Sequence record: NC_041884.1 | Direction: 5' to 3' (one strand) | Length of the DNA: 64,000 bases | Shown: positions 36,995 to 50,522 of the stretch, piece after piece | How the letters are laid out: the number at the start of each line of letters is the position of its first letter | Numbering within the stretch: position 1 is the stretch's first letter | Made by a program: the position numbers and the translations under genes | Notes under the pieces: model-generated | The model's input: the letters and a program-made list of their open reading frames with translations, nothing else | What the model was told of the DNA's origin: nothing | Database searches by the model: none

Positions 36995-37066
36995 TTGAGA
37001 AAATCAGATTCGAACTGATCACGGCCAGAAATTATTCTAGTGCTCTACCAACTGAGCTATTTCACA
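36995..37066 (-). tRNA. pseudo-tRNA with a collapsed anticodon loop
   Basis: TAGCTCAGTTGGTAGAGC D-arm, ATCAG-TTCGAAT-CTGAT T-arm, anticodon arm CTAGA-ATAATT-TCTGG, no CCA. Confidence 0.7.
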
Positions 37067-37963: not shown

Positions 37964-38310
37964 ATATGGAAGACAGATAGTGTGTTGTTACACCAAATGC
38001 TCTAAGGGTCTGTATATGCGTCTCTAGATACTTTATTTCCACGTTGTTTCTCTAGATTAAGTGTAAGGCTTCGCCCATCATACACGTTGCTCCAGCATAA
38101 CTTCTAGAGGTGTCGGGAGCGCAATCTAACATTCATGCCTTTACCTAACCGCCCATATTACTTTCTGCATTACATATACAACTGTACTGGTCCTTCCCCT
38201 GAGTTTCTACGTTTAGACATCTTTTGGAATTAGATACTTATTACGGATCACTCTTGCAACTCTTTAAAAGATGGCTACCTTCAGGCCAACTTCCTAACTG
38301 CCTTTCATAT
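37964..38310 (-). ncRNA. about 350-nt ncRNA whose 5' part resembles 23S rRNA helices 42-44 (uL11-binding site)
   Basis: GTTAGGAAGTTGGCCTGAAGGTAGCCATCTTTTAAAGAG...CGTAATA...CTAAT...AAGATGT-CTAAAC; closed by ATATGAAAGGCAG/CTGTCTTCCATAT. Confidence 0.75.
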
Positions 38311-38326
38311 ATTTTCAATCACACTG

Positions 38327-39201
38327 TTATTGAGTTTGTTGCCAAGAAACTACTTTAGGGTAAGTTTTTAAATCATCAAGAGCTTCATCGATAGTATTAA
38401 ATCTACATGGACATATATGACCTTTAGTAAGATTTATATACGAGTAAGTATTATCATTTTTATTTCGTAATATCATTACTTCAACAATACCATCTGTTCG
38501 TGTAATTTCTAATTTCAAAAGAATCCACCTTGATGTAATGTAACTAAGAAACAAACTATTGCAACAACAATAAGTATTATGAAGATAACTCCTAATACCA
38601 TTAAAATAGTTGAAATCATATTAAACTATTTCCTTAAAACGGATCCCAATTTCATTGTAGGCTTCTATATACGTTACAGCACCATCAATTTCAAAACCAA
38701 CTGGTTTTTCTACAATTTCAGTAATGAATCGAAGAAGCGTTCTAACATCAGTAATAGTAGTTAAATAAAAACCTTTTAATGGTAAACGAACTATCCATGT
38801 ATCAATAGAAGGGCATTTTTTGATACCTTGAATTAAGGTAACATTAATATCTTCTTCAATCATATTTTTTAAATTTACTAAACTAGCATTCATAGTAAAA
38901 GGTCTAGAAACTAATTGTTCTCTACATTCTTTTAAAACTTCTAAAGCTGTTTTCATAGTTACTCTTCAATATCTTGATATGGATGTAATACGTAATCTTC
39001 TAAAAAAGAATCTATTGAGTCCCATTCAAAGAAACAACATTGGTCACCTTCAGGACAAGTTGCAAAGATTTGATTTTTATACATACGAGCAATTAAAGAT
39101 GCATTAGCTACATCAAAATCCTCATCAGGGTATTTTAAAATAATCTCTTTACATTTAGATTTAATTATTTCTTTAGAATCAGATTCTTCATATATTTTCA
39201 T
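38327..39201 (-). CDS. three small hypothetical proteins
   Basis: ORFs 38327-38554 (start probably internal), 38621-38956 and 38959-39201. Confidence 0.55.
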
Positions 39202-39220: not shown

Positions 39221-40880
39221 TATAAAATTACATTTACTGTTGGTTCTTTCGACAACACTTTTCGGATTTTATATGAAGATCGTATCAAAGGTTCTAGCTT
39301 CGATCCTCTGTTGTCATGCACCTCTAAACATTTGTGTGGTAACCCACTCACTGAACCTTATCAGCTTGAACTCAATGTGCCACCCAGAGATTACTCTGAC
39401 CTCATTTATGTTGTAAATGTAATTTTATATTTAAATAATAAGAGCCAAGTCTTCACAAGAGGATGGATTCGAACCACCGACAACAGTAGGGATTTTACTG
39501 CCTACAATACTCTACCGACTGAGCTACTCTGCAATTTCCACTCTCTTATTATTTAGATGGTAAGAATATAAGTTAGTGTTAAGACGTTGATACATTAGGT
39601 ATTACCCTAACGCCAAGAGTTGAACTTGTTAAAAACCTTCTGTAACCCAACAACTATCTTTATTACTGGACAGTAATCATCTGAGATTATTAACCTATAC
39701 CGTATTCTTACCTCTAAATAATAATTAAAAGACATCTAATAACCTAACTTCAGATAAGGGTACTTACTCGATTATCATGAGACTCTACTAAATGTCTTTT
39801 AATTATTATTTAAAAGGTGTGAGGTACAACTCTCACAATGAACCATGTAGCCATTTTGGTTAGCGTCAAGCTGTATACAGCTTAGTTTCTCTAGTCAGCC
39901 CGCTTTAGGTTGTCCCTAATTGTGTGATATCAACACTACCATTTTTCTATCTTACGATAACACCAATGATCAAGTGCTTGTGGTACTAGAAGTCATTAAG
40001 GTGAATATGCCTTTATAGATCATACCAAATCTACAGGCCCATCACTCCCTTCAAATTTTATTACGCCACATCCTGTTTGGACTTACACCGTGTTGGATGT
40101 TATTTATCGGTAGAATTTGAGCCATTAACCAGAGCGCATTTATTAACTTATACTTTCATATAAGATTAGACCTTTTAGAGTGTCCTGATTTCTCAAGCTG
40201 AACTCTATTACCATCTCATATAAGTTGTCAGACTTATACTAACTACTTTTAGAATTACTCCTAATTTCGAGTGTCTCTACTATACAAAGGATAAATCCTT
40301 CTTAGCTATTATAACCATATGAAATAGAACCTCACTTAGAATTATAATATTTAGGTAATTGAGGAAAAACATGAGAATATAAAAGCATACTGCCATAATA
40401 TACGAGCCGTTAAGCCATCAGAATCGAACTGAGTCCTCTTTTATACCTCGATGCCCTTCATTATCGAAAAAGGGCTTTGGCACAATTGTGTTGTGCATCT
40501 CGTATCACTTGAGGTAATAACTCTTGGAATCTAGCAGAGGAGCGACCTCTCTTATTTTATATACCGATTGGATTCTTGTCTCGGTTTGTGGGTCTATTAC
40601 ATGTCATCGTTTCTCAGTTGACAGTGAGGGATCTACAAAAATTGGAATAGACTGACAATGGAGGTAATCATTAATCCCCTATTACAGAGATTAATCCTAT
40701 AGAATGCCTAAGAATTTCAGTTGCAATCTTACATTCAAAAGGACTTATATCAATTAGTATATTGGACAATATGTTCTGGAGACGGATTAGGCGTCTCACT
40801 CTTTTACTAAAAATTAGTAAACGCTTTTAGCCTCGGATTAAGAGACATTCCACTACATTTTAAGCTACAGACCTCAATAC
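39221..40880 (-). ncRNA. 1.7-kb non-coding cluster of stem-closed structured RNAs
   Basis: no credible ORF; abutting inverted repeats 39221/39429, 39432/39555, 39552/39718, 39715/39812; several T-loop-like hairpins. Confidence 0.7.
39454..39533 (-). tRNA. pseudo-tRNA with an expanded or alternative anticodon arm
   Basis: TAGCTCAGTCGGTAGAGT D-arm, GGTGG-TTCGAAT-CCATC T-arm, GTAGG-CAGTAAAATC-CCTAC (10-nt loop), bulged acceptor, no CCA. Confidence 0.65.
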
Positions 40881-40905
40881 TTCCAATCATACTAAATTCT
40901 ATACA

Positions 40906-41346
40906 TTATATAGAAACTGTTTTACAAACTTTTGATAAAATAACATCATCAAAAGAATTCTTTGTTATTTGTTGCCACTTAATAGAAGAGGAATTTGCAT
41001 CTCTTACATATTTAGCATCTTTTGTAAATTGTACATACCTGACTATAGCAGATTTTCTTAAAACACAACTATAAATATTATAGATCAGTAATACATCACC
41101 ATCACTAGCAAAGTCATTAGTTGATGATTGTATATGCACAATAGCAGGAACTGAGTAAACTAAAGGACGAATTTCAACAATAGCTTTAGGATTTACATAG
41201 TACTTATCTGTACTTGTTTCTCCAACTTTATACCATGACTTTTCAGCTGTCATTAATTCGATATCACTTTGTACTAATTCTGCATTAGCTTGGATTGTTG
41301 TAAATAAGGAACAAGCCATTAAAGCTAAAATATAAAAATATTTCAT
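40906..41346 (-). CDS. secreted protein (surface-adhesin-E-like pattern)
   Basis: signal peptide; WYKVG...YYVN...YSC...W..I...S.D...L..VC. Confidence 0.5.
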   Translation of the reverse strand: MKYFYILALMACSLFTTIQANAELVQSDIELMTAEKSWYKVGETSTDKYYVNPKAIVEIRPLVYSVPAIVHIQSSTNDFASDGDVLLIYNIYSCVLRKSAIVRYVQFTKDAKYVRDANSSSIKWQQITKNSFDDVILSKVCKTVSI

Positions 41347-41843
41347 TATTTTAAATCCTTCTCTTCTATTAAGGTTATTCGTCTACATAATCCTTGAGAT
41401 TTATCTTTAGCATAAGTTTTAACTAATTTAAAATAAGATTTATTAGGAATCTTTGTAACTATAAATTCAAAGATTTTATTAAACCATATAGCTAAATATG
41501 CACATAAGATAAATATAAATATAATAGCTGAAAGAGTACCTACTACAAATTTAAATAAAAAACCCATTAATAAAAATGGATTAAAACTAGTTAATTCTCT
41601 TGTATCAAAGATTGTTATTGTTTTAACAGCATAAACTAAGATTACACTACATAAGAATAAATAAAGAATAGCTTTCAGTAGTGTAGAAAATAATGTACAA
41701 ACTGATCTTAAGCAACAAAGAGGAGACTTTGGGTTTTCTGGATCAAAACGAGTAACAATCCAACTTGTTAAGAAAAAGTTAGAACAAAAACAAAGAAATT
41801 TGTATGTCTTGCTATTAGCACTTAATTCAAAATTATCATTCAT
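41346..41843 (-). CDS. membrane protein
   Basis: hydrophobic segments; start probably MNDNF. Confidence 0.55.
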   Translation of the reverse strand: MNDNFELSANSKTYKFLCFCSNFFLTSWIVTRFDPENPKSPLCCLRSVCTLFSTLLKAILYLFLCSVILVYAVKTITIFDTRELTSFNPFLLMGFLFKFVVGTLSAIIFIFILCAYLAIWFNKIFEFIVTKIPNKSYFKLVKTYAKDKSQGLCRRITLIEEKDLK

Positions 41844-41988
41844 TATGGATGACCTCTTCCTACGATAGTTAAGAGAATCCATGCAAAGAAGCCTAAAGCA
41901 CCACTTAGTACAAAACTTGCTATAATGATAAATTTGATAACACCTAACACATCTGATTTTGTCATGGAGTTTATCCTTAAAGGGAATA

Positions 41989-42046
41989 TATGTTTAAAGG
42001 ATAGAAAGGAAACTGGAGCGAGAATCCTTTCTATCCTTTAAACATA
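41989..42046 (-). repeat. perfect 22-bp inverted repeat with a 14-nt loop
   Basis: TATGTTTAAAGGATAGAAAGGA and its complement. Confidence 0.85.
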
Positions 42047-42049
42047 CAC

Positions 42050-42613
42050 TTAAAAATATTTAATAAATTTACTTAAGTGTTTCTTTTTTATTTTAAAAGA
42101 AGTACTTTCAATTCCACCAAACATTTGACAATTAGCTAGTATCTCTGCCCAAGCAGTTAAATACAAACTAAATCCTATCTCTGATTGAATTAGTTCTTGT
42201 GCTTTTTCATCACTTGCTTTTAATATATGGAAATCCATATCATGTTTAACAAGATCATGACCTATTAAGAGATGAGGAAAGAGTTGTTTATATATCTCAT
42301 ATGACACTTGTGCATGATTGGGAAACTGTTGTTTACCTTCTTCATTTACAATTCTACAATAAGGCTTTCCTAAATCATGATAGATTTGATAATGCTTCAT
42401 TGTTTCATAATCTAAGAGAGTAATCCAATTCTTTTTATATACTTCTATAAGGGATTCAGGAACACCTTCAGGTACTACTCCTTTTTCTAAAGAAAGTAAT
42501 AGCTTTAAATATTCATTATTAACCATTAAACCATGTTGATACATATTGACATTTTCAAACTGATAACAGTTCTTCATATCTTTAAGTACCTTATCAAAAG
42601 TTAAGATCTCCAT
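42050..42613 (-). CDS. HD-domain phosphohydrolase
   Basis: QHG...YHDLGKP...FPNHA...HDMDFH...D-type motifs. Confidence 0.75.
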   Translation of the reverse strand: MEILTFDKVLKDMKNCYQFENVNMYQHGLMVNNEYLKLLLSLEKGVVPEGVPESLIEVYKKNWITLLDYETMKHYQIYHDLGKPYCRIVNEEGKQQFPNHAQVSYEIYKQLFPHLLIGHDLVKHDMDFHILKASDEKAQELIQSEIGFSLYLTAWAEILANCQMFGGIESTSFKIKKKHLSKFIKYF

Positions 42614-42936
42614 AACTGATATCTCCTCAATAATATTCTTTGGTCTTGAGTAAGAGGTTCAGTTCCGAACGCTGTGAGACCATAGTCCCAAGAAGGTTCG
42701 AAGAAAGATATAGTTTTGATACCTTTAGTTTCTAAATCTTTTATAGCTTTCTCTAATTGATATTGATTTTTAACACCAATCACTACTAAAGAACTAGGTT
42801 CAGATTGATCTCTGTCACCTAAATATATTCCTGCTTCTAAAGCAGCATGGCCAGCTTGAACTATTTGTTGTTCAACTGGAATATCTCTTCTAACAAACAC
42901 ATAAGTATGTTTTTTATTTTCATGAATCTAAGTCAT
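42601..42936 (-). CDS. PTH2-like peptidyl-tRNA hydrolase with an in-frame TAG at codon 3
   Basis: ATG ACT TAG ATT CAT GAA AAT AAA AAA CAT ACT TAT GTG TTT GTT AGA AGA GAT: the upstream codons are in frame with YVFVRRDI...QAGHAALEAG...F.EP...GLTAF.TEP. Confidence 0.8.
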
Positions 42937-42978
42937 TAATTTTTCTCTATAAGTTAATATAAATTTTTGTGAGTTTAA

Positions 42979-43197
42979 TTACTTATTCCAAGTCTTAAAC
43001 AGTTTCAACACTTGAGGTTTAACTGAGTAAACAAAAGTACCATTAACAAACTTAGCATTAGTTAATTCATTCCAAAGCATAGTACTACTAAGATTATTAT
43101 TAACCATAAAATTATATAATTTTAAAACTTCCATATGTTCAGGAAGTTCACCATCTTTTTTAATTTGAGCTTTAATTCTGTTTAATACTTTACTCAT
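42979..43197 (-). CDS. hypothetical protein, paralogue of 33512-33736
   Basis: shared DG.LPEH.EVLKLY; strong AGGAGG SD. Confidence 0.7.
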   Translation of the reverse strand: MSKVLNRIKAQIKKDGELPEHMEVLKLYNFMVNNNLSSTMLWNELTNAKFVNGTFVYSVKPQVLKLFKTWNK

Positions 43198-43218
43198 GGT
43201 ACCTCCTGTTTAAGATAC

Positions 43219-43343
43219 TGGCGTTGCCAACTGGGAGTCTAACCCTAATAGAACTTCAATATTATAACCATGTCTAGAATATTATAATATCGTCTACAGC
43301 CTTTCTCCTTCGAATGGAGCTGTGCTACGTACACTATGACAAC
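43219..43343 (-). tRNA. 125-nt atypical tRNA-Arg(UCG)-like RNA
   Basis: GTTGTCA/TGGCAAC acceptor + G + CCA, GTGT/GCAC D-stem, CTCC-ATTCGAA-GGAG arm extended by ACAGC/GCTGT, about 45-nt variable hairpin, TTAGACT T-loop. Confidence 0.6.
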
Positions 43344-43347
43344 ATTG

Positions 43348-43421
43348 TGGTCCAAAATCTGAGATTCGAACTCAGACGCAGGGTTTTAGGGACCCCTGTG
43401 CTACCATTACACCAATTCTGG
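43348..43421 (-). tRNA. tRNA with CUA anticodon (amber-suppressor type), C at position 33
   Basis: CCAGAAT/ATTTTGG + A + CCA; GGGGT-CCCTAAA-ACCCT anticodon arm; CTGAG-TTCGAAT-CTCAG. Confidence 0.8.
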
Positions 43422-43426
43422 AAAGG

Positions 43427-45167
43427 TTACTTCTCAGATGCAGCTAATATACCACAACAAAGAATTAAAGCTACAAACAAACTACCACCAAATTGGTAGA
43501 ATGGTGTAGCATAAGAAGGAGTAAAATAGTTCGTAAAAGCAATAGCAACAATAGCACTAATAACTACTAGTAAAACCATAGCTATGATTATGCCTACACC
43601 TATTAACATACCTTTAAGAAATTTCAATATGATTTTCATTTTGTTTTATCTGATCTAAAGTATCTTCTTCAGCTTGCATGTTTACAAATAATTTAATCTG
43701 TTTTTGAAATATATCTTTCATATCATTTGAAACATTTTTAAAGTTAGGAATTGCTACAGGTTCATCATTCCAAATAGAATTTTTATTTGACATAAGCTAA
43801 AGCCTTAGTGATTGTAGATAAATGCATCTCTTCTACTTTTAATTTTAATTGTTTAATATCTTTTATTTCGTTAAAGAATTTAGAACGAATACCAGTAAAA
43901 CTAAAAAGAGTTGTATCTTTAGTTGTTTTATCAATATGTACAAATCCAAAAGATGTTTGAGCTGTAAAACTTAAAGGAGATTCAATCCACTTTATTTTAA
44001 TAACTTGAGCCATATAACACCTAATTAACGATAGCTTATCATACCTAAAGATTTTAATTTTGAAATAATTGCACCTGAAGATCTTTTATGTAATCGAGCA
44101 ATTTCTTCGATACTAAGTTTTTTATTAACCCATTCATCTCTTAAGGCTTTAACTTCTATAGTAGTCCATTCTGAGTATCCTCTATAATCAAAGTAATGAT
44201 TATATTGAGTAACTTCTCTATCTCTTTTTCGAGTTTGCTCTGGACTAGAATACATAGTTGGATAGTAATGTATTTCAGTTTTAATTGGATCAGGTAATCT
44301 ATTTACTTTTCTATCTAATTCTTTTTTCAGCTCTTCTTTAAGTCTTTCTTCTGTTTCTAATAAGAGTTTTTTAAAGTTACATATAGTAATACTGAGGACT
44401 AGGAGGAAAATAGCTGTCATACCTACAACAGTAGCTATTAAATCATTCATACTTGATTCCAAAACAATAAGAAAGAAATATTAAAAAGACAAGGTAAAAA
44501 CCTATATTACATATAATTAATTGAATTATTAATGAGAAGTTAATCTTAGGAGCAGAATTAATCATACCTAGTGTACAAACACAACAACCTAGTAATGATA
44601 GATAATGAATTACTTCATACATATAAATTCTCTTTAAAGATGGATAGGACAGAAGGAAAGGTAAAACACGAAAAACAACAACACAGGAGATATGTAATCC
44701 TATCCATCTTTAAAGAGAACGTAAAGGAGTTTTAATGAGACTATTAATATTCTTCACCATCATCATTACTCTCCTTTAAATTTTCTTCTAATTCTTGAAT
44801 ACCTTCATTGATATGCTCTTCATCATCTAATTCATAATCTTTCTTAGAATTAGAATGAATCGAAGATTTATTAAAGGTATTCATATGCTTTGCTATAAAG
44901 TTATTTTTCATAAGGAATAAATTTCCAACGATCTAACTTTCCATAATATTGCAACTGATGATTCTCTAGAATATAGACAAAGCCAGAATCTTCTTTTTCA
45001 CATTTATTTAAAAAAGATTGAATAGTTTTTGAACTTATAACTTTAGAAGGAATCTTACAATAATGAGCATTGTCATAATAACGATAGAAATGTAATTGTG
45101 GTTTTGAATAAATAACTTCATCATAAACACAATCTAACATTTCACTAAATAAGACAAATTTAAACAT
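43427..45167 (-). other. cluster of small hypothetical and membrane genes
   Basis: ORFs 43427-43639, 43783-44013, 44025-44462 (C-terminal WT..E...L...H.RS.GAI..KL HTH-like), 44901-45167 and several peptides under 60 aa. Confidence 0.55.
44628..44719 (-). repeat. perfect 22-bp inverted repeat with a 48-nt loop
   Basis: TTCTCTTTAAAGATGGATAGGA at 44628-44649 and its complement at 44698-44719. Confidence 0.9.
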
Positions 45168-45822
45168 TTACATTACTCAGTTTTTCTATTTCATTCATAA
45201 CTCTACTAGGTGGAAGAGTTAGTACTAATTTAAAGTATTTTCTACAAGCTTTTAAAGTTTTAGGATGAATACTAAAATTCAATCTAGAAGCGAACCTATA
45301 GACTCTAAGAATTCTAAGATGATCTTCCAAAACCCTCTCTTCTGCTTTGCCATTAAAACGTATTACCTTATTGTTAAGATCATTCAACCCTTGTTTAGTT
45401 GGATCAAGTAATGTATTAGAAAATGGATCATAGTAGAGAGAATTAATAGTAATATCACGTCTAATAGAATCTGTTTCAATTGTTCCTATTGAAACAGTTT
45501 CAGGTCTTCTTCCGTCTGTATAAGTACCATCTTTACGGAACAAAGCAACTTCATATTGCTTTCCATGTTTAGAAGCAATTAACACTAAGAAAGACTTTCC
45601 AGCTTCATTAATATCCCAACCATTTTCTAGTAAAGATGATTCAATATTATCCAAGTTTCCATCTGTTACTAAATCAAAATCGTTAGGAATATCACCTAAT
45701 AATAAATCTCTAACACAACCACCAACTAAATATGTATTAGTGGAATGATTATTAATAATGAGAAAAAGTTGAAGAAGAGTTAAATCAGAGACAATAGGAC
45801 GAGTATTCATATTATTGACCAA
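45160..45822 (-). CDS. cca: tRNA nucleotidyltransferase (CCA-adding/poly(A) polymerase family), head domain only
   Basis: YLVGGCVRDLLLG..PNDFD, RRDITINSL, EDHLRILRVYRFASRL. Confidence 0.88.
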   Translation of the reverse strand: MVNNMNTRPIVSDLTLLQLFLIINNHSTNTYLVGGCVRDLLLGDIPNDFDLVTDGNLDNIESSLLENGWDINEAGKSFLVLIASKHGKQYEVALFRKDGTYTDGRRPETVSIGTIETDSIRRDITINSLYYDPFSNTLLDPTKQGLNDLNNKVIRFNGKAEERVLEDHLRILRVYRFASRLNFSIHPKTLKACRKYFKLVLTLPPSRVMNEIEKLSNVNV

Positions 45823-45891
45823 AAATTCCTAAGAGGGTATTACAAATACATAGTACTACTACAATAATACAGATATACTTTGCTGGCATTC

Positions 45892-46533
45892 TTAAACCTT
45901 TATGAAAAAACGTATAGTGCTATTACCTTGAGGATCTGGAGTCATCCAAAAATCTGCTTTTATATCAGGAAATAACTTAACAATTGCTTCTAAAATAGAT
46001 TTTGCTTTTTGATTACGAGCTTCAATATTTCTTATTTGAGAATCAGATGAAATACGTACATCCCACATGTTATATACATTATTCCAAACTAATTTAATCA
46101 GTCGTTCCGTATCTAAACCATAAAGATGAAATAGACTTACTAATTGATAACGAGTTACTTTTGCAAATTTATCTTCTTCTTGGTAAGTCCAAGGAGTAAC
46201 TGGAGAGAAAAATTGATAATGTTGTTTCTCACTAATACGATAATTACATTTAGATACATCTTTAACTAAAGTTAGTAGATTTTCAATGTCAATTGTATCG
46301 TAGTTAACTCTTTGTCGTAGTACTATTGGTTTAGACCGAACTTGTTCAATTTCAACAATTTTATAATAATTATCAAACATATGATAAAGTTTACATACAA
46401 ATTCAACATCGCCAATAGTAATAACATTAAGTTCAGATGTATTAATTACATATGAAGCTTTAATAATCCAAGTACCATCTTCACATTTAATTACACTTGA
46501 CATGCATTTAGAAGAGTATGAAAGACTACTCAT
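45892..46533 (-). CDS. hypothetical protein
   Basis: ORF track. Confidence 0.5.
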   Translation of the reverse strand: MSSLSYSSKCMSSVIKCEDGTWIIKASYVINTSELNVITIGDVEFVCKLYHMFDNYYKIVEIEQVRSKPIVLRQRVNYDTIDIENLLTLVKDVSKCNYRISEKQHYQFFSPVTPWTYQEEDKFAKVTRYQLVSLFHLYGLDTERLIKLVWNNVYNMWDVRISSDSQIRNIEARNQKAKSILEAIVKLFPDIKADFWMTPDPQGNSTIRFFIKV

Positions 46534-46852
46534 AAATTGATCCTGACTCTATTACAGTATAGAAGTTAATATACGTATATAAGTTAAAGTTTGGAGGGAA
46601 AGACTTGTAAGAATCAAAAAATTCAGATCCACCATTCCCCTCTACTTTAACTCTAAATTTATTTAACAAAGTATGTAATCTTTTTTCAATAATTGAAACT
46701 TCTTTACGTTTTGCATAAACCCACCAACCACCTGATATCACTTTTCCATGTATACGAGACAATTGTTTAACCCGTTTATCCAGATTCTTTGTAATACCAA
46801 TCTTAGTTAATTCTGGGTATTTTTCAAACATTAAGAAGTATAAAGTATACAT
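46526..46852 (-). CDS. GIY-YIG/T5orf172-domain nuclease
   Basis: LYF...TKIGITK...RV...IEKRLH...GGSEFF. Confidence 0.75.
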   Translation of the reverse strand: MYTLYFLMFEKYPELTKIGITKNLDKRVKQLSRIHGKVISGGWWVYAKRKEVSIIEKRLHTLLNKFRVKVEGNGGSEFFDSYKSFPPNFNLYTYINFYTVIESGSIYE

Positions 46853-46853
46853 A

Positions 46854-49069
46854 TTAATAACCTAAGTCTTTAAATATTTTTCCTGAATCATAATCTTGAG
46901 CATCAAAATATTGTTTGCACTCTTTATGAAACTCTTTAAAATTTTGAAGAGTAGTATGTATTGGATTAAGTACAGTAAGAAGAGAAAGAACTGTTTGAAA
47001 TTTAATTGTTTTAAAATTTAAAAGAGAGAGAAGTTGATTCACTTTCTTAAGGTCTTTCTCTTCACCATTCATTAAATCTTCAACAAACAGAATAATTAAA
47101 TATATTACTTGATCAGTTGTATATACTTCTTCTAATTGATTTAAAAGTGATGATCTTTTTCTTACAGATTTATTATCGTAATACAGTGAGTCCATATACA
47201 TAGCTTCACTGTACGTTAACTCTATAGGAATATGAGAAAATTTACTCATACAGTTACTCACTATCTGAAACAATACCTATTAAAAATTCTATAGGAATTT
47301 GTTCAATGGTTTTTGAACGATTTTTTAAAACTACTAAAGCTTTTTCTTGATTAGCTGTTATAAGCAAACCTTGTAAACCCTTATGTAAGCCATTATAAGG
47401 ACGAACTAAAGCAACTAATTGATGCCCATAAATATCTTTTAATTTCATTTAATAGATTGATACCACTTAGCTATTTTACCAGTGTGCCATAAATAATAAA
47501 TGATTAAAGATAGAATGCCTGCACCACATAAAGTACAAATCATTCCTACAGTAACAACACTATACAATAAATATGTATGTTCTTGAGATACTGGGGCTTT
47601 CTTATCAGCAAGAATAAATCCAATTGAAAGTAAGCTTACAACAAGAAGAAATAATATAAACATTATTCAACTCCTTTAAATATTTTAAAACTATCTAGAA
47701 TTAACAAAGATTCTGAAGGAATACTAAATTCAGTAAACTCAATTCGATTTTCTTTGAAATATTCATAAGTGGACATGAAATTGTTTAAGACAATCCAAGC
47801 AGAGTAAAAACTATCTGCACTTCCAAAATGATCAACATAATGCTGAAAGTAATGAAAGAAAAACTTATTATCATCAACAGTTAATGGAAGCTTTAAAGTA
47901 TTTAAAGGTACTTGAAGATTGTTTAAAGATTCGTATAAAGACGTATAGACATCAATAAGTTGTCTATACGTCTTATCTACGACTAATACACTTAAAGTGA
48001 CATTAATCATCTACAGCCTTTTTCTTTTTACACTTACCTGTAAAGTTATTAAGCTTACTATCATGAACATATTCAAGTGCAACTTCACCACCTTTATGTA
48101 CAAAGGTAGCAACTTTACGGAATGGAGCTACTTTTTCAAACTTCTTGATACGTGCGTAAGCTTTAGCAGCTGAACGAGTAACAGGAATTGGTTGAGAATA
48201 AGTATTAGCTACTTGTGAAAAATGTTCTACAGATTTAATAACAATTACTTGACCTTTACTATTTAAGTAAGGAACAAAAGTCATTGCATTACGTAACGAC
48301 TCTTTAACCCAGCCAAGTTTTGCTACAGGTTTAGTACGAATTTTACGAGAAGCAACACCAGCTAATGCTGTTACTGCTTGTTGATCGTTAGGGTGAGCCT
48401 TAAGATGCTTGGCTAATTTACGCTTAGCATTCTTAGAGAAATTACCTTTCATTGCATATGAAGTAAATTTTGCTTTACGGCCAGCACCAGGCTTAAGTTT
48501 AGACATTTCTTTAATCCTTTTTTGGAAATTAATTGAAATAAAAAGAGAAATACACAGAGAAGTTTTAATTAGTCTTCAGAATTATCAATCACAATTGAAG
48601 CATAGTAATCTAAGCGACTATTGATCTCACTAATACTTTGAGCTAATACAGTTAATTTAAACATTAGTTATCCTTTAATAACACTTGTCATTTTTACATT
48701 TAATTCTACTTCAACCACATCATGATTTTCATAATAATGTACTAGTTGACGTAGAACAGGTTCAGGGATTGTTTCAAATACTCGTTCCTTAAATGTAGGA
48801 ACTTGAGGAGTATATGTTTGATCTTTTGTTTTAGGAATTTCTTTAATAGGTGTCTTAGTTTTCTTAGCAAAAACATCTTTTGAAGAAAGCAACTCTTTAG
48901 TCAATGGAACAATTCCATTGATATGATCTTTATAACGTTCCCAGCGACCTTTATTATAAAGTTCATAACTATCTTTTTCTCTTTGACGAAAAATAGTTAC
49001 AGTGTTCTTCTTTTGATTAAAGCGAACATGTGTAGAAGTCTCAGGAATAAATGTGTTACTTAAATTCAT
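46854..49069 (-). other. six hypothetical genes including a very basic protein (48003-48506)
   Basis: coupled ORFs. Confidence 0.55.
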
Positions 49070-49076
49070 TTTAGAA

Positions 49077-50522
49077 TTACTCTTTAACTAATGCATAACG
49101 ATCTACTAATAGCGTTTCTTTCATAATAGCTTCAGGTGAAAACTCATCTAAAGTATTAGAACAAACTGCTTTTAATAGAGAAGGAGAAAAGCTAGATAAT
49201 AAACAAGCACCTGATTCATCATATTTAACAGGAAAGTTATTATTAGAAGGAGTGTTAAGAACCCAAAAGATTAATTTAGGACATTTTAATCCTGCTTCTT
49301 TAAACTTAACTTGAGCATCAACATATGCTGAGCTTTCACGAGAATTAAAATTAAACTGAGTGTCACTGAAGAAAACTAAATATTCAGGTAATTGATCTGA
49401 AGAAATATTATTAGAAACTACTAGATCTAATAGTAGTTTAAAGACACCTTCAACATTTGTACTATAACCAACTTGACTTTGAGCAATAAGATCATAACGC
49501 TCTTTTAAAGTTTTACAATCTTTGAGATCAACAAAAGAAGGATGATCTGCAAATGTAGTTACAAGGTTTTTAAATGGACCTTCAATACGTTCACTGATGT
49601 AAGCACCTAAAGTAATTGCAATATGTTTATATGTTGCATTACCTACAGCAGGAGCTTCCATTGAACCACTTAAATCAACTACAGGAAGAATCGATAAACC
49701 TTCTTTAATTAAATTAGGAAAGCTATTCCACTGAGCTTCTACAACAGGATTAGGTTCGAAATAAGGAGAATAACGAGACCCTAATATTGAATAAACTTCA
49801 GAAATTTCATGAAGAAATAATGTAGACGAATTTAAAGTTGCAGTTCCCTCACTCACTTTATTAATAAAATCATTAAAACGATCTGAGTCTTTAGACAAGA
49901 ATGTATTTTTATAACGATTAAAAGCTTTAGAAGGAACTGTACTATAATCTATTTCAGCGATACGATGCTCACACAATAAACGTTCAGTAACTTTAGCTCG
50001 TAAAGGGACAATTAACTGTCTTAATTCTTTAGGAGTGACCTTAAGATAAGAACGTAACATAGATGCAACATTGCCTTTCAAAGGTAACCACTTTGCAACT
50101 AATATCTGAGTTTCAGGATTTTTCAAATGTTCAGCTAATAGTCGAATAATCTTTTTCTTAATACGAAGATCAACATCACATTCTACTAAATTAAATAAAT
50201 CAGGATAATACCCTAACTCTACAATTTTAGATAAAAGATTAGTTTTTAAAAATACATCAATATCTATATGAGCTAAATGAATCATACAGAGATTAAATGA
50301 ATTACGAATACCTTTACCTTGTCTAATATCACGAGAATTCAAAAGATTACGAATTGCTAAATCTTTGTCTTCTAGATAAGCTTTTCGAAAATCTAAAATA
50401 GCTTCTTGAGAATAGTTAGGATCACCTAATTTAACAAAGAAATCTAAATTATGAGAAGCAGTACTAGAATAAGCTACTGCCCCATTAGTGGTTTGTGTTT
50501 TTAAAGCTGTTGCTGCAAACAT
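49077..50522 (-). CDS. DUF2828 / TROVE-like protein with a C-terminal vWA domain
   Basis: TTNGAVAYSST, RDIRQGKG.R, AKWLP, VDLSGSM (MIDAS), TNVEGVF, FSDTQFN, IFWVL. Confidence 0.85.
   Translation of the reverse strand: MFAATALKTQTTNGAVAYSSTASHNLDFFVKLGDPNYSQEAILDFRKAYLEDKDLAIRNLLNSRDIRQGKGIRNSFNLCMIHLAHIDIDVFLKTNLLSKIVELGYYPDLFNLVECDVDLRIKKKIIRLLAEHLKNPETQILVAKWLPLKGNVASMLRSYLKVTPKELRQLIVPLRAKVTERLLCEHRIAEIDYSTVPSKAFNRYKNTFLSKDSDRFNDFINKVSEGTATLNSSTLFLHEISEVYSILGSRYSPYFEPNPVVEAQWNSFPNLIKEGLSILPVVDLSGSMEAPAVGNATYKHIAITLGAYISERIEGPFKNLVTTFADHPSFVDLKDCKTLKERYDLIAQSQVGYSTNVEGVFKLLLDLVVSNNISSDQLPEYLVFFSDTQFNFNSRESSAYVDAQVKFKEAGLKCPKLIFWVLNTPSNNNFPVKYDESGACLLSSFSPSLLKAVCSNTLDEFSPEAIMKETLLVDRYALVKE

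What the first reader, a model, noticed from the sequence alone, without database searches (positions are those of the whole stretch)
42050..43421. Amber-gated peptidyl-tRNA hydrolase next to a CUA-anticodon tRNA
Seen in the sequence: the PTH2-like gene starts SD-ATG ACT TAG (TAG at 42928-42930). The codons after the stop supply the first beta-strand (KHTYVFVRRD), and the internal GTG has no SD. About 410 nt upstream in the same orientation lies a tRNA with loop CCCUAAA (anticodon CUA, unusual C33). The genome otherwise uses the standard code, and TAG ends several ORFs. Inference: PTH and the coupled HD phosphohydrolase are made only when UAG is read through, through the suppressor or RF1 inactivation. 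This would be a sensor of termination status analogous to prfB autoregulation.
Basis: partly seen in the sequence, partly recalled or inferred. Interest (0 to 1): 0.85.

Follow-up and report, generated by a model that had tools for sequence, protein, structure and literature searches.

The report
Suppressor-tRNA-gated phage tRNA-hydrolase cassette
A jumbo Acinetobacter phage carries a stop-codon-reading tRNA beside two tRNA-end enzymes whose genes are blocked by that same stop codon, and this lock-and-key arrangement recurs in about a hundred other phage sequences, which names a likely target for the puzzling "orphan" suppressor tRNAs of large phages.

Summary
The window is Acinetobacter phage vB_AbaM_ME3. 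On the minus strand, ATG-ACT-TAG (TAG 42930-42928) runs in frame into a 108-codon ORF with a confident PTH2 fold. A tRNA(CUA) with a C33 loop lies 412 nt upstream.

The TAG is not chance or error. In 98 of 106 related loci, a TAG immediately precedes the domain in frame. An ATG with a Shine-Dalgarno sequence usually lies 1-4 codons upstream. No usable downstream start exists in many of them. The base after the gate TAG is a purine in 63 of 66 variants.

The adjacent HD phosphohydrolase gene has its own in-frame TAG in 39 of 70 loci, at four different positions. A same-strand tRNA-CUA or tRNA-UUA lies within about 6 kb in 33 of 41 long loci. Ungated relatives have none.

ME3 otherwise uses the standard code, and I found no other amber-interrupted gene in it.

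Best reading: programmed amber readthrough by the linked phage suppressor tRNA licenses a two-enzyme tRNA 3'-end module. Published phage papers report these suppressor tRNAs without naming a target. I rate this a new variant of phage stop-codon recoding, of high interest.

The parts
43348..43421 (-). Phage tRNA with anticodon CUA (amber suppressor). Canonical cloverleaf, encoded CCA, A73, loop CCCUAAA with C33.
   Evidence: ARAGORN. Rfam RF00005 54.7 bits. Annotated tRNA-OTHER, anticodon CTA. Nearest blastn resemblance is to phage tRNA-Trp genes.
42979..43197 (-). 72-aa ORF with a strong SD, lying between the tRNA and the gated gene. Function unknown. Not found in the other cassettes.
   Evidence: phrog_30368, unknown function; no tblastn hit in related loci.
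42931..42936 (-). Two-codon leader ATG ACT, the proposed true start of the PTH2-like gene.
   Evidence: Read. Homologous leaders with an SD occur in 88% of 66 distinct loci, against 22% at control positions.
42928..42930 (-). In-frame amber codon (TAG) at codon 3, followed by A. This is the gate.
   Evidence: Conserved in 98 of 106 related loci. The next base is a purine in 63 of 66 gates, against 35 of 75 genuine TAG stops, p = 6e-11.
42601..42927 (-). PTH2-fold (peptidyl-tRNA hydrolase 2-like) coding part after the TAG, 108 codons plus the TAA stop.
   Evidence: AF2 pLDDT 90.2. The top 14 Foldseek PDB hits are all PTH2 proteins, TM 0.56-0.79. Pfam PTH2 E 0.014 for ME3, and 7 of 8 homologues hit PTH2, best E 1.9e-6.
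42050..42613 (-). HD-domain phosphohydrolase, 187 aa. It overlaps the PTH2-like 3' end by 13 nt and has its own AGGAG SD. No TAG in ME3.
   Evidence: AF2 pLDDT 96.7. Best PDB matches are the HD region of a class-II tRNA nucleotidyltransferase, 3wfo/3wfp/3wfr (sequence profile E 1.2e-4; Foldseek TMq 0.60). Adjacent in most related loci and fused in XacN1.
41985..42048 (-). Long near-perfect hairpin directly after the HD stop codon. Likely the transcript end of the unit.
   Evidence: Sequence. It surfaced as a spurious miRNA-precursor match in Rfam. Function is inferred.
45160..45822 (-). Context: tRNA nucleotidyltransferase head domain with no HD domain of its own, 2.2 kb upstream on the same strand.
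   Evidence: Pfam PolyA_pol E 4.3e-31. Annotation gp258.

Best explanation
The region is a three-part phage cassette: a suppressor tRNA(CUA), a PTH2-fold aminoacyl/peptidyl-tRNA ester hydrolase, and an HD phosphohydrolase related to the HD domain of CCA-adding enzymes.

Translation of the hydrolase starts at ATG 42936 and meets UAG at codon 3. Without the suppressor, RF1 releases a dipeptide and no enzyme is made. When the phage tRNA(CUA) is made, matured and charged, it inserts an amino acid at the UAG and the full enzyme is produced.

The HD enzyme follows by overlap or coupling in ME3. In many other phages it needs readthrough of its own UAG.

Output of the module is therefore set by suppressor-tRNA activity relative to RF1.

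- **Shown:** the anatomy, the folds, the conservation of the gate, and its linkage to suppressor tRNAs.
- **Inferred:** that readthrough happens, that the linked tRNA does it, and which amino acid goes in.
- **Physiological purpose (licensing or timing key, suppressor homeostat, or termination sensor):** open.
For: 1. **Gate conserved across distant phages.** SD-ATG, then 1-2 codons, then TAG in frame, read directly in Yersinia fHe-Yen9-04, Serratia BF, Pectobacterium CBB, Cronobacter GAP32, Salmonella Arash, Ralstonia RsoM2USA and a 595-kb uncultured phage. Several have no in-frame ATG/GTG/TTG between the TAG and the conserved beta1, which is why those genes are unannotated or truncated in the records.
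2. **Numbers.** 98 of 106 related loci have the TAG and 4 have TAA.
3. **Leader length.** The ATG lies 1-4 codons upstream in 58 of 66 distinct variants.
4. **Initiation signal.** An SD match of at least 4 nt precedes 88% of leader ATGs, against 22% at control positions.
5. **Context.** The base after the gate TAG is A 38, G 25, C 3, T 0. After genuine TAG stops it is T 20, C 20, G 18, A 17. Fisher p = 6e-11.
6. **HD gene.** It carries its own in-frame TAG in 39 of 70 loci, at four positions: start-proximal, about codon 46, about codon 54 and about codon 64. Homologous protein continues on both sides of the internal TAGs. Only readthrough explains this.
7. **XacN1 fusion.** XacN1 fuses HD and PTH2-like into one ORF, itself preceded by ATG AAG TAG.
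8. **Linked suppressor tRNAs.** A tRNA-CUA or tRNA-UUA is present in 33 of 41 loci of at least 16 kb. All 84 such tRNAs are on the gene's strand. The median distance of the nearest tRNA-CUA is 1.9 kb. In several loci they are the only tRNAs present.
9. **Ungated relatives.** RaK2, L092, L095 and L127-L134 have none.
10. **Protein databases.** Some gene callers already translate the TAG as Q. For P0002, P0003 and P0019 the DNA reads TAG ('translates_to_query: no').
11. **Phylogeny.** The gate sits on both sides of the midpoint root, with at least 2 losses and at least 3 switches to TAA.
12. **ME3 genome.** It uses the standard code and has no other credible amber-interrupted gene.
13. **Fold.** A GTG start would truncate beta1.
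Against: - There are no expression, proteomic or aminoacylation data for any member.
- ME3's own SD is weak, 3 nt.
- ME3's tRNA has C33 instead of the near-universal U33, which may lower decoding efficiency. Four of 62 other suppressor tRNAs share C33.
- 8 of 41 long gated loci, including L023, show no suppressor tRNA within the fetched flanks.
- TAG still ends about 10% of ME3 ORFs, so an efficient suppressor would also extend those proteins.
- The suppressor tRNAs are not orthologous in sequence, and their amino-acid identity could not be assigned.
Confidence: 0.8

Rival explanations
1. Termination-status sensor. The suppressor tRNA supplies a constant competitor, and the gate reports RF1 capacity. 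When termination at UAG is slow, stalled or dropped-off peptidyl-tRNAs rise. Readthrough of the gate rises too, producing more hydrolase. This is a feed-forward loop comparable to prfB.
For: The gated product has a peptidyl-tRNA-hydrolase fold. Some large relatives place a phage tmRNA about 2.3 kb upstream of the gated gene, which gives a ribosome-rescue theme. The early position of the stop resembles the early in-frame stop of prfB.
Against: No evidence shows that RF1 varies during infection. The HD partner and its independent gates are not explained by a termination sensor. There is no frameshift element. The product is not a release factor, so the loop is not closed on its own stop codon.
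Confidence: 0.2
2. Suppressor homeostat. The two enzymes act on the suppressor tRNA itself, by deacylating it or trimming its 3' end. Their synthesis requires charged suppressor, so a negative feedback loop clamps amber readthrough at a tolerable level while the suppressor serves another purpose.
For: The three parts travel together, sometimes with tRNA-CUA as the only tRNA nearby. Both enzymes belong to families that act on tRNA 3' ends. TAG is still used as a stop in ME3, so unchecked suppression would be costly.
Against: No other amber target was found in ME3, so the 'other purpose' is missing there. Substrate specificity is unknown.
Confidence: 0.2
3. The annotation is right. The protein starts at GTG 42900, and ATG-ACT-TAG is a chance mini-ORF unrelated to the tRNA.
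For: The GenBank and RefSeq annotation uses the GTG. A GTG is in frame 10 codons after the TAG.
Against: The GTG has no SD and would cut beta1 and invariant Tyr9. Many homologues have no in-frame start after the TAG. The TAG is conserved in 98 of 106 loci with an SD-ATG leader.
Confidence: 0.04
4. The gate is passed without the phage tRNA, either by termination-reinitiation at a non-canonical codon after the mini-ORF or by near-cognate host tRNAs.
For: ATT or ATC follows the TAG in some members, including ME3. Very short ORFs are known to terminate poorly (my knowledge of minigene work).
Against: The codon after the TAG is often AAT, AAC, GTT, GTC or ACT. Internal TAGs at codons 46-64 of the HD gene cannot be explained by reinitiation. 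The frame between ATG and domain is preserved throughout. Linkage to suppressor tRNAs is strong.
Confidence: 0.07
5. Sequencing error or pseudogene in ME3, or a genome-wide TAG-to-amino-acid code (code 15).
For: ME3 was sequenced with 454 chemistry (PMC5000817). ARAGORN labels the tRNA 'Pyl'.
Against: The TAG is not in a homopolymer and is conserved in independent genomes and metagenomes. TAG ends 11 of 116 ORFs in the window, and no other in-frame TAG gene exists in the 234.9-kb genome.
Confidence: 0.01

Closest known systems
Stop-codon recoding in phages with phage-encoded suppressor tRNAs (code 15/code 4 phages: crAss-like, Lak and others; Borges et al., bioRxiv 10.1101/2021.08.26.457843)
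   Same: A phage tRNA(CUA) infecting a standard-code host decodes in-frame TAGs in phage genes. Expression of those genes becomes conditional on the suppressor.
   Different: There, many late, structural and lysis genes are recoded, and TAG is given up as a stop. Here the genome keeps the standard code, and the in-frame TAGs are confined to one small tRNA-enzyme module. In ME3 that is a single codon, usually at codon 2-5. That paper does not mention this module.
prfB (RF2) autoregulation
   Same: An in-frame stop codon early in the gene makes output depend on how efficiently that stop is recognised.
   Different: prfB needs a +1 frameshift with an internal SD, and its product acts on its own stop codon. 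Here the frame continues through the stop, a dedicated tRNA is linked, and the product is not a release factor.
Lambda bar minigenes and host Pth (from my own knowledge, not tested here)
   Same: A 2-3 codon SD-ATG-X-stop unit. Such units shed short peptidyl-tRNAs whose recycling needs peptidyl-tRNA hydrolase.
   Different: bar minigenes are free-standing and toxic in pth mutants. Here the mini-ORF is in frame with a hydrolase gene and is conserved together with a suppressor tRNA.
Archaeal/eukaryotic peptidyl-tRNA hydrolase 2 (PTH2, PF01981; e.g. AF2095, MJ0051, Bit1)
   Same: Same fold (TM 0.7-0.79) and the same N-terminal VR-D-L...Q..HA motif region.
   Different: 14-21% identity. The ME3 protein scores below Pfam's gathering score. 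The family has its own invariant set: Y9, R13, D15, Q24, H27, E77, R97. CBB carries a separate canonical PTH2 gene as well.
Orphan suppressor tRNAs reported in jumbo phages XacN1 and RsoM2USA
   Same: These are the same tRNAs. XacN1 has two CUA suppressors and RsoM2USA has one (PMC5852040, PMC8504454).
   Different: Those papers could not name a target. The XacN1 authors read through the 18 annotated amber stops and found nothing. The targets proposed here are invisible to that test because the leader ORF is only 2-3 codons long.

Membership tests
PTH2 peptidyl-tRNA hydrolase (PF01981) | PTH2 alpha/beta fold | tested here: met
   AF2 pLDDT 90.2. The top 14 Foldseek PDB hits are all PTH2 proteins, prob 1.00, TM 0.56-0.79.
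PTH2 peptidyl-tRNA hydrolase (PF01981) | Sequence score above Pfam's gathering cut-off | tested here: not met
   ME3 piece scores 16 bits against a cut-off of 23, E 0.014. 7 of 8 homologues hit PTH2, best E 1.9e-6. PDB profile search: best hits are PTH2 proteins, E 5.5e-4. I call it PTH2-like, a divergent sister family.
PTH2 peptidyl-tRNA hydrolase (PF01981) | Hydrolysis of the peptidyl-tRNA ester bond; catalytic residues in place | not testable with these tools
   Residue-level superposition was not done, and activity needs a biochemical assay.
Phage genome-wide TAG recoding (code 15) | Many genes with in-frame TAG; TAG abandoned as a terminator | tested here: not met
   TAG ends 11 of 116 ORFs in the window. 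No gain in ORF length from TAG recoding. Only one credible in-frame TAG gene in the whole ME3 genome.
Phage genome-wide TAG recoding (code 15) | Phage-encoded tRNA with anticodon CUA | tested here: met
prfB-type autoregulation | Early in-frame stop bypassed by a +1 frameshift, with the product acting on that stop | tested here: not met
   The ORF continues in the same frame after the TAG. The product has a PTH2 fold and is not a release factor.
tRNA-Pyl (ARAGORN's label) | Atypical tRNA-Pyl architecture: 6-bp anticodon stem, tiny D-loop without GG, no canonical T-loop, with pylS/pylBCD genes | tested here: not met
   The ME3 tRNA has a 5-bp anticodon stem, D-loop AAUGGUA containing GG, and T-loop UUCGAAU. 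It fits the general tRNA model end to end. The label reflects the anticodon only. I did not search for pyl genes.
HD domain of class-II CCA-adding enzymes (tRNA 3'-end phosphohydrolase) | HD-fold with H...HD...H...D metal ligands, closest to the nucleotidyltransferase-attached HD | tested here: inconclusive
   Pfam HD is below cut-off, E 0.016, and only 4 of 16 members hit. Best PDB sequence and fold matches are 3wfo/3wfp/3wfr, 'tRNA processing enzyme' (E 1.2e-4; Foldseek E 2.7e-3, TMq 0.60). H79, D80, H100, D125 and H129 are invariant. Substrate is untested.

The most novel reading that the evidence does not exclude
Large standard-code phages carry a portable lock-and-key translational switch. 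It consists of a dedicated suppressor tRNA whose main or only coding targets are two tRNA 3'-end enzymes, each locked by a stop codon placed right after the start codon or in a loop.

This would be a previously unrecognised mode of gene-specific regulation in bacterial viruses. It would also be the long-sought target of the 'orphan' suppressor tRNAs. The purpose may be to tie tRNA-repair or tRNA-recycling capacity to the state of the phage's own tRNA supply or to termination capacity.
Probability: 0.55. Interest if true: 0.88.

Novelty: new variant of a known kind. Interest (0 to 1): 0.82.

Why it matters
- **An open question.** Papers on XacN1 and RsoM2USA record suppressor tRNAs in standard-code jumbo phages but could not say what they read. 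This finding offers a concrete, testable target.
- **Annotation.** The genes are missing, truncated or split in GenBank and RefSeq records. PHROGs holds only the fragments, labelled 'unknown function'.
- **Regulation.** If readthrough is confirmed, stop-codon recoding in phages is not all-or-none. It can be used on a single operon as a regulatory gate.
- **Evolution of recoding.** It may represent the first step on the path to genome-wide recoding.
- **Function.** It points to an unstudied pair of phage enzymes acting on tRNA 3' ends, with possible roles in tRNA recycling, ribosome rescue or counter-defence.
- **Tools.** Natural compact suppressor-plus-gate cassettes could serve as orthogonal expression switches.

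Tried and rejected
- **Genome-wide recoding.** Rejected. Comparing ORF length under each recoded stop shows no special gain for TAG. TAG is a normal terminator.
- **Other amber-gated genes in ME3.** The window scan gave candidates at 49090 and 41385. Both are ATG..TAG strings inside or overlapping the end of the upstream gene, with ordinary starts just downstream. The whole-genome scan added nothing.
- **Close relatives of ME3.** A single-protein scan of IMG/VR found only ME3 itself. The first 8-sequence alignment was too diverse for pattern search. A 4-sequence alignment worked.
- **Amino-acid identity of the suppressor.** Pairwise tRNA comparison gave no consistent isoacceptor family. ME3's tRNA is weakly Trp-like, while the others are nearest to Met, Arg, Lys or Phe tRNAs. 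Discriminator bases vary.
- **RNA structure near the TAG.** None found. The region is less structured than shuffles, z +1.46.
- **Promoter and terminator scan of the unit.** Uninformative.
- **The 72-aa ORF between the tRNA and the gene.** Not conserved in other cassettes.
- **L029 as a clean ungated control.** Rejected. It has ATG, 9 codons, then TAG, followed by a 1-nt frame offset.
- **Literature.** Searches for a prior description returned nothing that links suppressor tRNAs to this module.
Full report
**Identity of the window.** Megablast places window 40000-48000 at 164000-172000 of Acinetobacter phage vB_AbaM_ME3 (NC_041884.1, 234.9 kb, genus Metrivirus). Record coordinate equals window coordinate plus 124000. 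Nearly all genes here are on the minus strand. The window GC content is 29.7%.

**The observation.**
- On the minus strand the sequence reads ...tatagagaaaaatta ATG ACT TAG ATT CAT GAA AAT AAA AAA CAT ACT TAT GTG TTT GTT AGA AGA GAT....
- The TAG occupies 42930-42928. The frame stays open for 108 codons to TAA 42603-42601.
- The record annotates the gene from GTG 42900 (gp266, hypothetical protein), and annotates the tRNA as 'tRNA-OTHER, anticodon CTA'.
- ARAGORN and Rfam confirm the tRNA at 43348-43421 (54.7 bits). Its anticodon arm is GGGGU-CCCUAAA-ACCCU, so position 33 is C.
- The distance from the tRNA 3' end to the ATG is 412 nt, on the same strand.
- The GTG has no SD. The ATG has only a 3-nt match (GAG). 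The neighbouring HD gene and the 72-aa ORF have 5-6-nt SDs.
- TAG terminates 11 of 116 gene-like ORFs in the window.

**What the proteins are.**
- *Post-TAG piece.* It gives a weak Pfam PTH2 hit (E 0.014), but 7 of 8 homologues hit PTH2. A family profile finds PTH2 structures first in the PDB.
- The AlphaFold model built on 15 homologues is confident (pLDDT 90.2). Its top 14 Foldseek matches are all PTH2 proteins: AF2095, MJ0051, Bit1, PH1539 and Sso Pth2.
- Beta1 is residues 7-13 (HTYVFVR). A GTG start at residue 10 would remove half of it and the invariant Tyr9.
- *Downstream gene (42050-42613).* It models at pLDDT 96.7. It resembles the HD region of a class-II tRNA nucleotidyltransferase by sequence profile (3wfo family, E 1.2e-4) and by fold.
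- A tRNA nucleotidyltransferase head domain without an HD domain lies 2.2 kb upstream.
- Both enzymes therefore point to tRNA 3'-end chemistry. Their substrates are not established.

**The decisive comparative result.**
- tblastn of the post-TAG piece found about 33 phage records. Many had no annotated feature under the match.
- I read the DNA of these records directly. The N-termini, with * for the TAG, are:
  - fHe-Yen9-04: MSH*IDKTWIY
  - BF: MTH*ND...
  - CBB and GAP32: MAQ*NEKTWIY
  - Arash: ML*NKHWIY
  - RsoM2USA: ML*ISDKTY
  - a 595-kb uncultured phage: MTH*VETPY
- All share an SD-ATG, one or two variable codons, then TAG in frame. Several have no in-frame start codon between the TAG and beta1.
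- Alignment-based scans of IMG/VR, metagenome and genome collections, plus three look-ups of database proteins, gave 107 loci.
- Of the 106 that could be scored, 98 have TAG as the in-frame stop immediately before the domain and 4 have TAA. Two (L092, L095) have ordinary ATG starts. Two (L029, L075) are frame-disrupted.
- Among 66 distinct leader variants, the ATG lies 1-4 codons before the TAG in 58.
- An SD match of at least 4 nt precedes 88% of leader ATGs, against 22% at random positions.
- The base after the gate TAG is A or G in 63 of 66 and never T. After 75 genuine TAG terminators in the same loci the four bases are even. Fisher p = 6e-11. From my own knowledge, a 3' purine, especially A, is the classic context for efficient amber suppression in enterobacteria.
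- Some metagenome gene callers already translate the codon as Q. P0002 (MLQINKK...), P0003 and P0019 do not translate from their DNA under table 11, and L037 reads ATG TTA TAG ACA.

**The HD partner is gated too.**
- The HD gene is adjacent in nearly all loci. In XacN1 it is fused N-terminally to the PTH2-like domain, and that fusion ORF is itself preceded by gagga...ATG AAG TAG.
- In 39 of 70 loci the HD gene carries its own in-frame TAG. This is at the start (ATG plus 1-3 codons plus TAG) in 14 loci, near codon 46 in 16 (the Eneladusvirus/Mimasvirus group, GGA TAG GGC), near codon 54 in 6, and near codon 64 in 3.
- RsoM2USA (MKS*ISKEE...) shows the start-proximal form as well.
- Homologous protein sequence continues on both sides of the internal TAGs. 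This excludes reinitiation and leaves readthrough.
- One TAA-gated phage (L073) also has an internal TAA in its HD gene.
- Repeated placement of the same stop codon at different sites in two partner genes argues for selection for suppressor dependence, not for a frozen accident.

**Linkage to suppressor tRNAs.**
- tRNA-CUA genes lie 0.1-6 kb from the gated gene, always on the same strand. There are 84 suppressor tRNAs in all. 80 of the 567 tRNAs in these loci are CUA. The median distance is 1.9 kb.
- Of gated loci of at least 16 kb, 33 of 41 contain one. In several (L047, L076, L082, L101, L122) suppressor tRNAs are the only tRNAs present, sometimes as 2-3 tandem copies.
- L060 pairs a TAG gate with a tRNA-UUA, which could read both UAA and UAG.
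- Ungated relatives have no tRNA-CUA in the fetched DNA. These are RaK2, L092, L095 and the ordinary-start proteins P0040, P0045, P0054 and P0061.
- The suppressor tRNAs are diverse in sequence and share little beyond the anticodon loop. That loop is CUCUAAA in 42 of 62, UUCUAAA in 10, and C33 forms in 4. The amino acid inserted cannot be assigned. Placement of the TAGs in N-terminal or loop positions suggests it may not matter.
- A maximum-likelihood tree places TAG-gated members on both sides of the midpoint root. Ungated forms are mostly one nested group, and TAA forms arise at least three times.

**Scope and limits.**
- The family is large: 2,451 cluster representatives at E <= 1e-3.
- Many more distant members have ordinary N-termini. 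The 96% figure applies to the closer relatives that the scans returned, not to the whole superfamily.
- In ME3 a whole-genome scan, done piece by piece, found no other credible in-frame TAG gene. There the tRNA appears dedicated to this operon.
- CBB and fHe-Yen9-04 have a second candidate, a GAP32_440 homologue preceded by ATG CTA TAG.
- There are no expression data.

**Mechanism.**
- The core is programmed amber readthrough by the linked phage tRNA, which makes module output a function of suppressor activity against RF1. I hold this at about 0.8.
- The early position of the stop has three consequences. The abortive product is only a di- or tripeptide. Any inserted residue is tolerated. From my own knowledge of minigene work, release factors act poorly on very short nascent chains, which would favour the tRNA.
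- In ME3 the HD gene overlaps the hydrolase gene by 13 nt. Its SD is predicted to pair with upstream hydrolase codons (weak support). This fits translational coupling but does not prove it.
- Why the module is gated is open. I consider three options:
  - A licensing or timing key that reports that phage tRNAs are made, matured and charged.
  - A negative-feedback homeostat on the suppressor.
- The tmRNA genes near some cassettes fit a ribosome-rescue theme. They do not discriminate between the three options.

**Comparison with the literature.**
- Phage stop-codon recoding with suppressor tRNAs is established for code-15 and code-4 phages, where many late genes are recoded (bioRxiv 10.1101/2021.08.26.457843).
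- The XacN1 paper reports two CUA suppressors and states that no target genes could be identified (PMC5852040).
- The RsoM2USA paper reports one suppressor without naming a target (PMC8504454).
- The ME3 announcement lists four tRNAs without comment (PMC5000817).
- Six targeted full-text searches found no description of an amber-gated PTH2-like/HD module. The searched library does not cover subscription-only papers.

**Verdict.**
Its physiological analogy to prfB is unproven.
- I class it as a new variant of a known kind: gene-specific rather than genome-wide recoding.
- Interest is high, because it makes the function of orphan phage suppressor tRNAs directly testable.

Noticed in passing
L106 7472-7817; L082 1469-1800: Phage-encoded permuted tmRNA genes (tags ATAPKALAMAAAA and VTAPKAMAFAAAA) lie about 2.3 kb upstream of the amber-gated PTH2-like gene. 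Three tandem tRNA-CUA genes lie downstream, in contigs of up to 463 kb.
   Followed up: partly
L012 (CBB) about 38298-38708; L013 (fHe-Yen9-04) about 38628-39041: A second candidate amber-gated gene, a GAP32_440 homologue. It reads SD-ATG(-ATG)-CTA-TAG followed by 134 open codons. The 26 residues between the TAG and the annotated ATG are conserved between the two phages. It sits directly after a tRNA-Gly gene.
   Followed up: partly
L071, L073, L074, L098 (gate position); L073 HD codon about 136: Some relatives carry TAA instead of TAG at the gate, with strong SD-ATG leaders. L073 also has an internal TAA in its HD gene. No suppressor tRNA was seen in the fetched flanks. L060 pairs a TAG gate with a tRNA-UUA 383 nt upstream.
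   Followed up: partly
L029 7930-8000: SD-ATG, nine codons and TAG, then the PTH2-like domain continues one nucleotide out of frame. This could be an assembly indel, a pseudogene or a programmed +1 shift at the stop.
   Followed up: no
window 36995-37066 and 39454-39532 (minus strand): Two further tRNA-like genes. One has an abnormal anticodon loop (ARAGORN '???', Rfam 45 bits). The other is annotated tRNA-Tyr(GTA), scores only 30 bits in Rfam and is missed by ARAGORN.
   Followed up: no
window 41985-42048: A long near-perfect inverted repeat lies immediately after the HD stop codon. Rfam scores it as a spurious plant miRNA precursor. It is probably the terminator of the unit.
   Followed up: no
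L023 11911-11986: In one Mimasvirus-like contig, the slot that holds tRNA-CUA in its close relative L024 holds an unrelated tRNA-Arg(CCG). The PTH2-like and HD genes still carry their TAGs.
   Followed up: partly
L128/L129 3545-3622: A phage contig with an ungated PTH2-like/HD pair carries a tRNA with anticodon UCA (opal-suppressor type) 6.4 kb upstream.
   Followed up: no
ME3 record 69447-72799, 89891-91142, 123533-124478 (outside or at the edge of the window): Several ME3 genes are annotated in two pieces: DNA polymerase, RecQ helicase and thymidylate synthase. My scan did not find a single in-frame TAG joining them, so the splits have other causes, such as introns, homing nucleases or 454 indels.
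   Followed up: partly
PHROGs phrog_34073, phrog_26054, phrog_14850: The phage protein-family library stores the C-terminal fragment of the PTH2-like protein and the 46-aa N-terminal fragment of the split HD protein as separate families of unknown function.
   Followed up: yes
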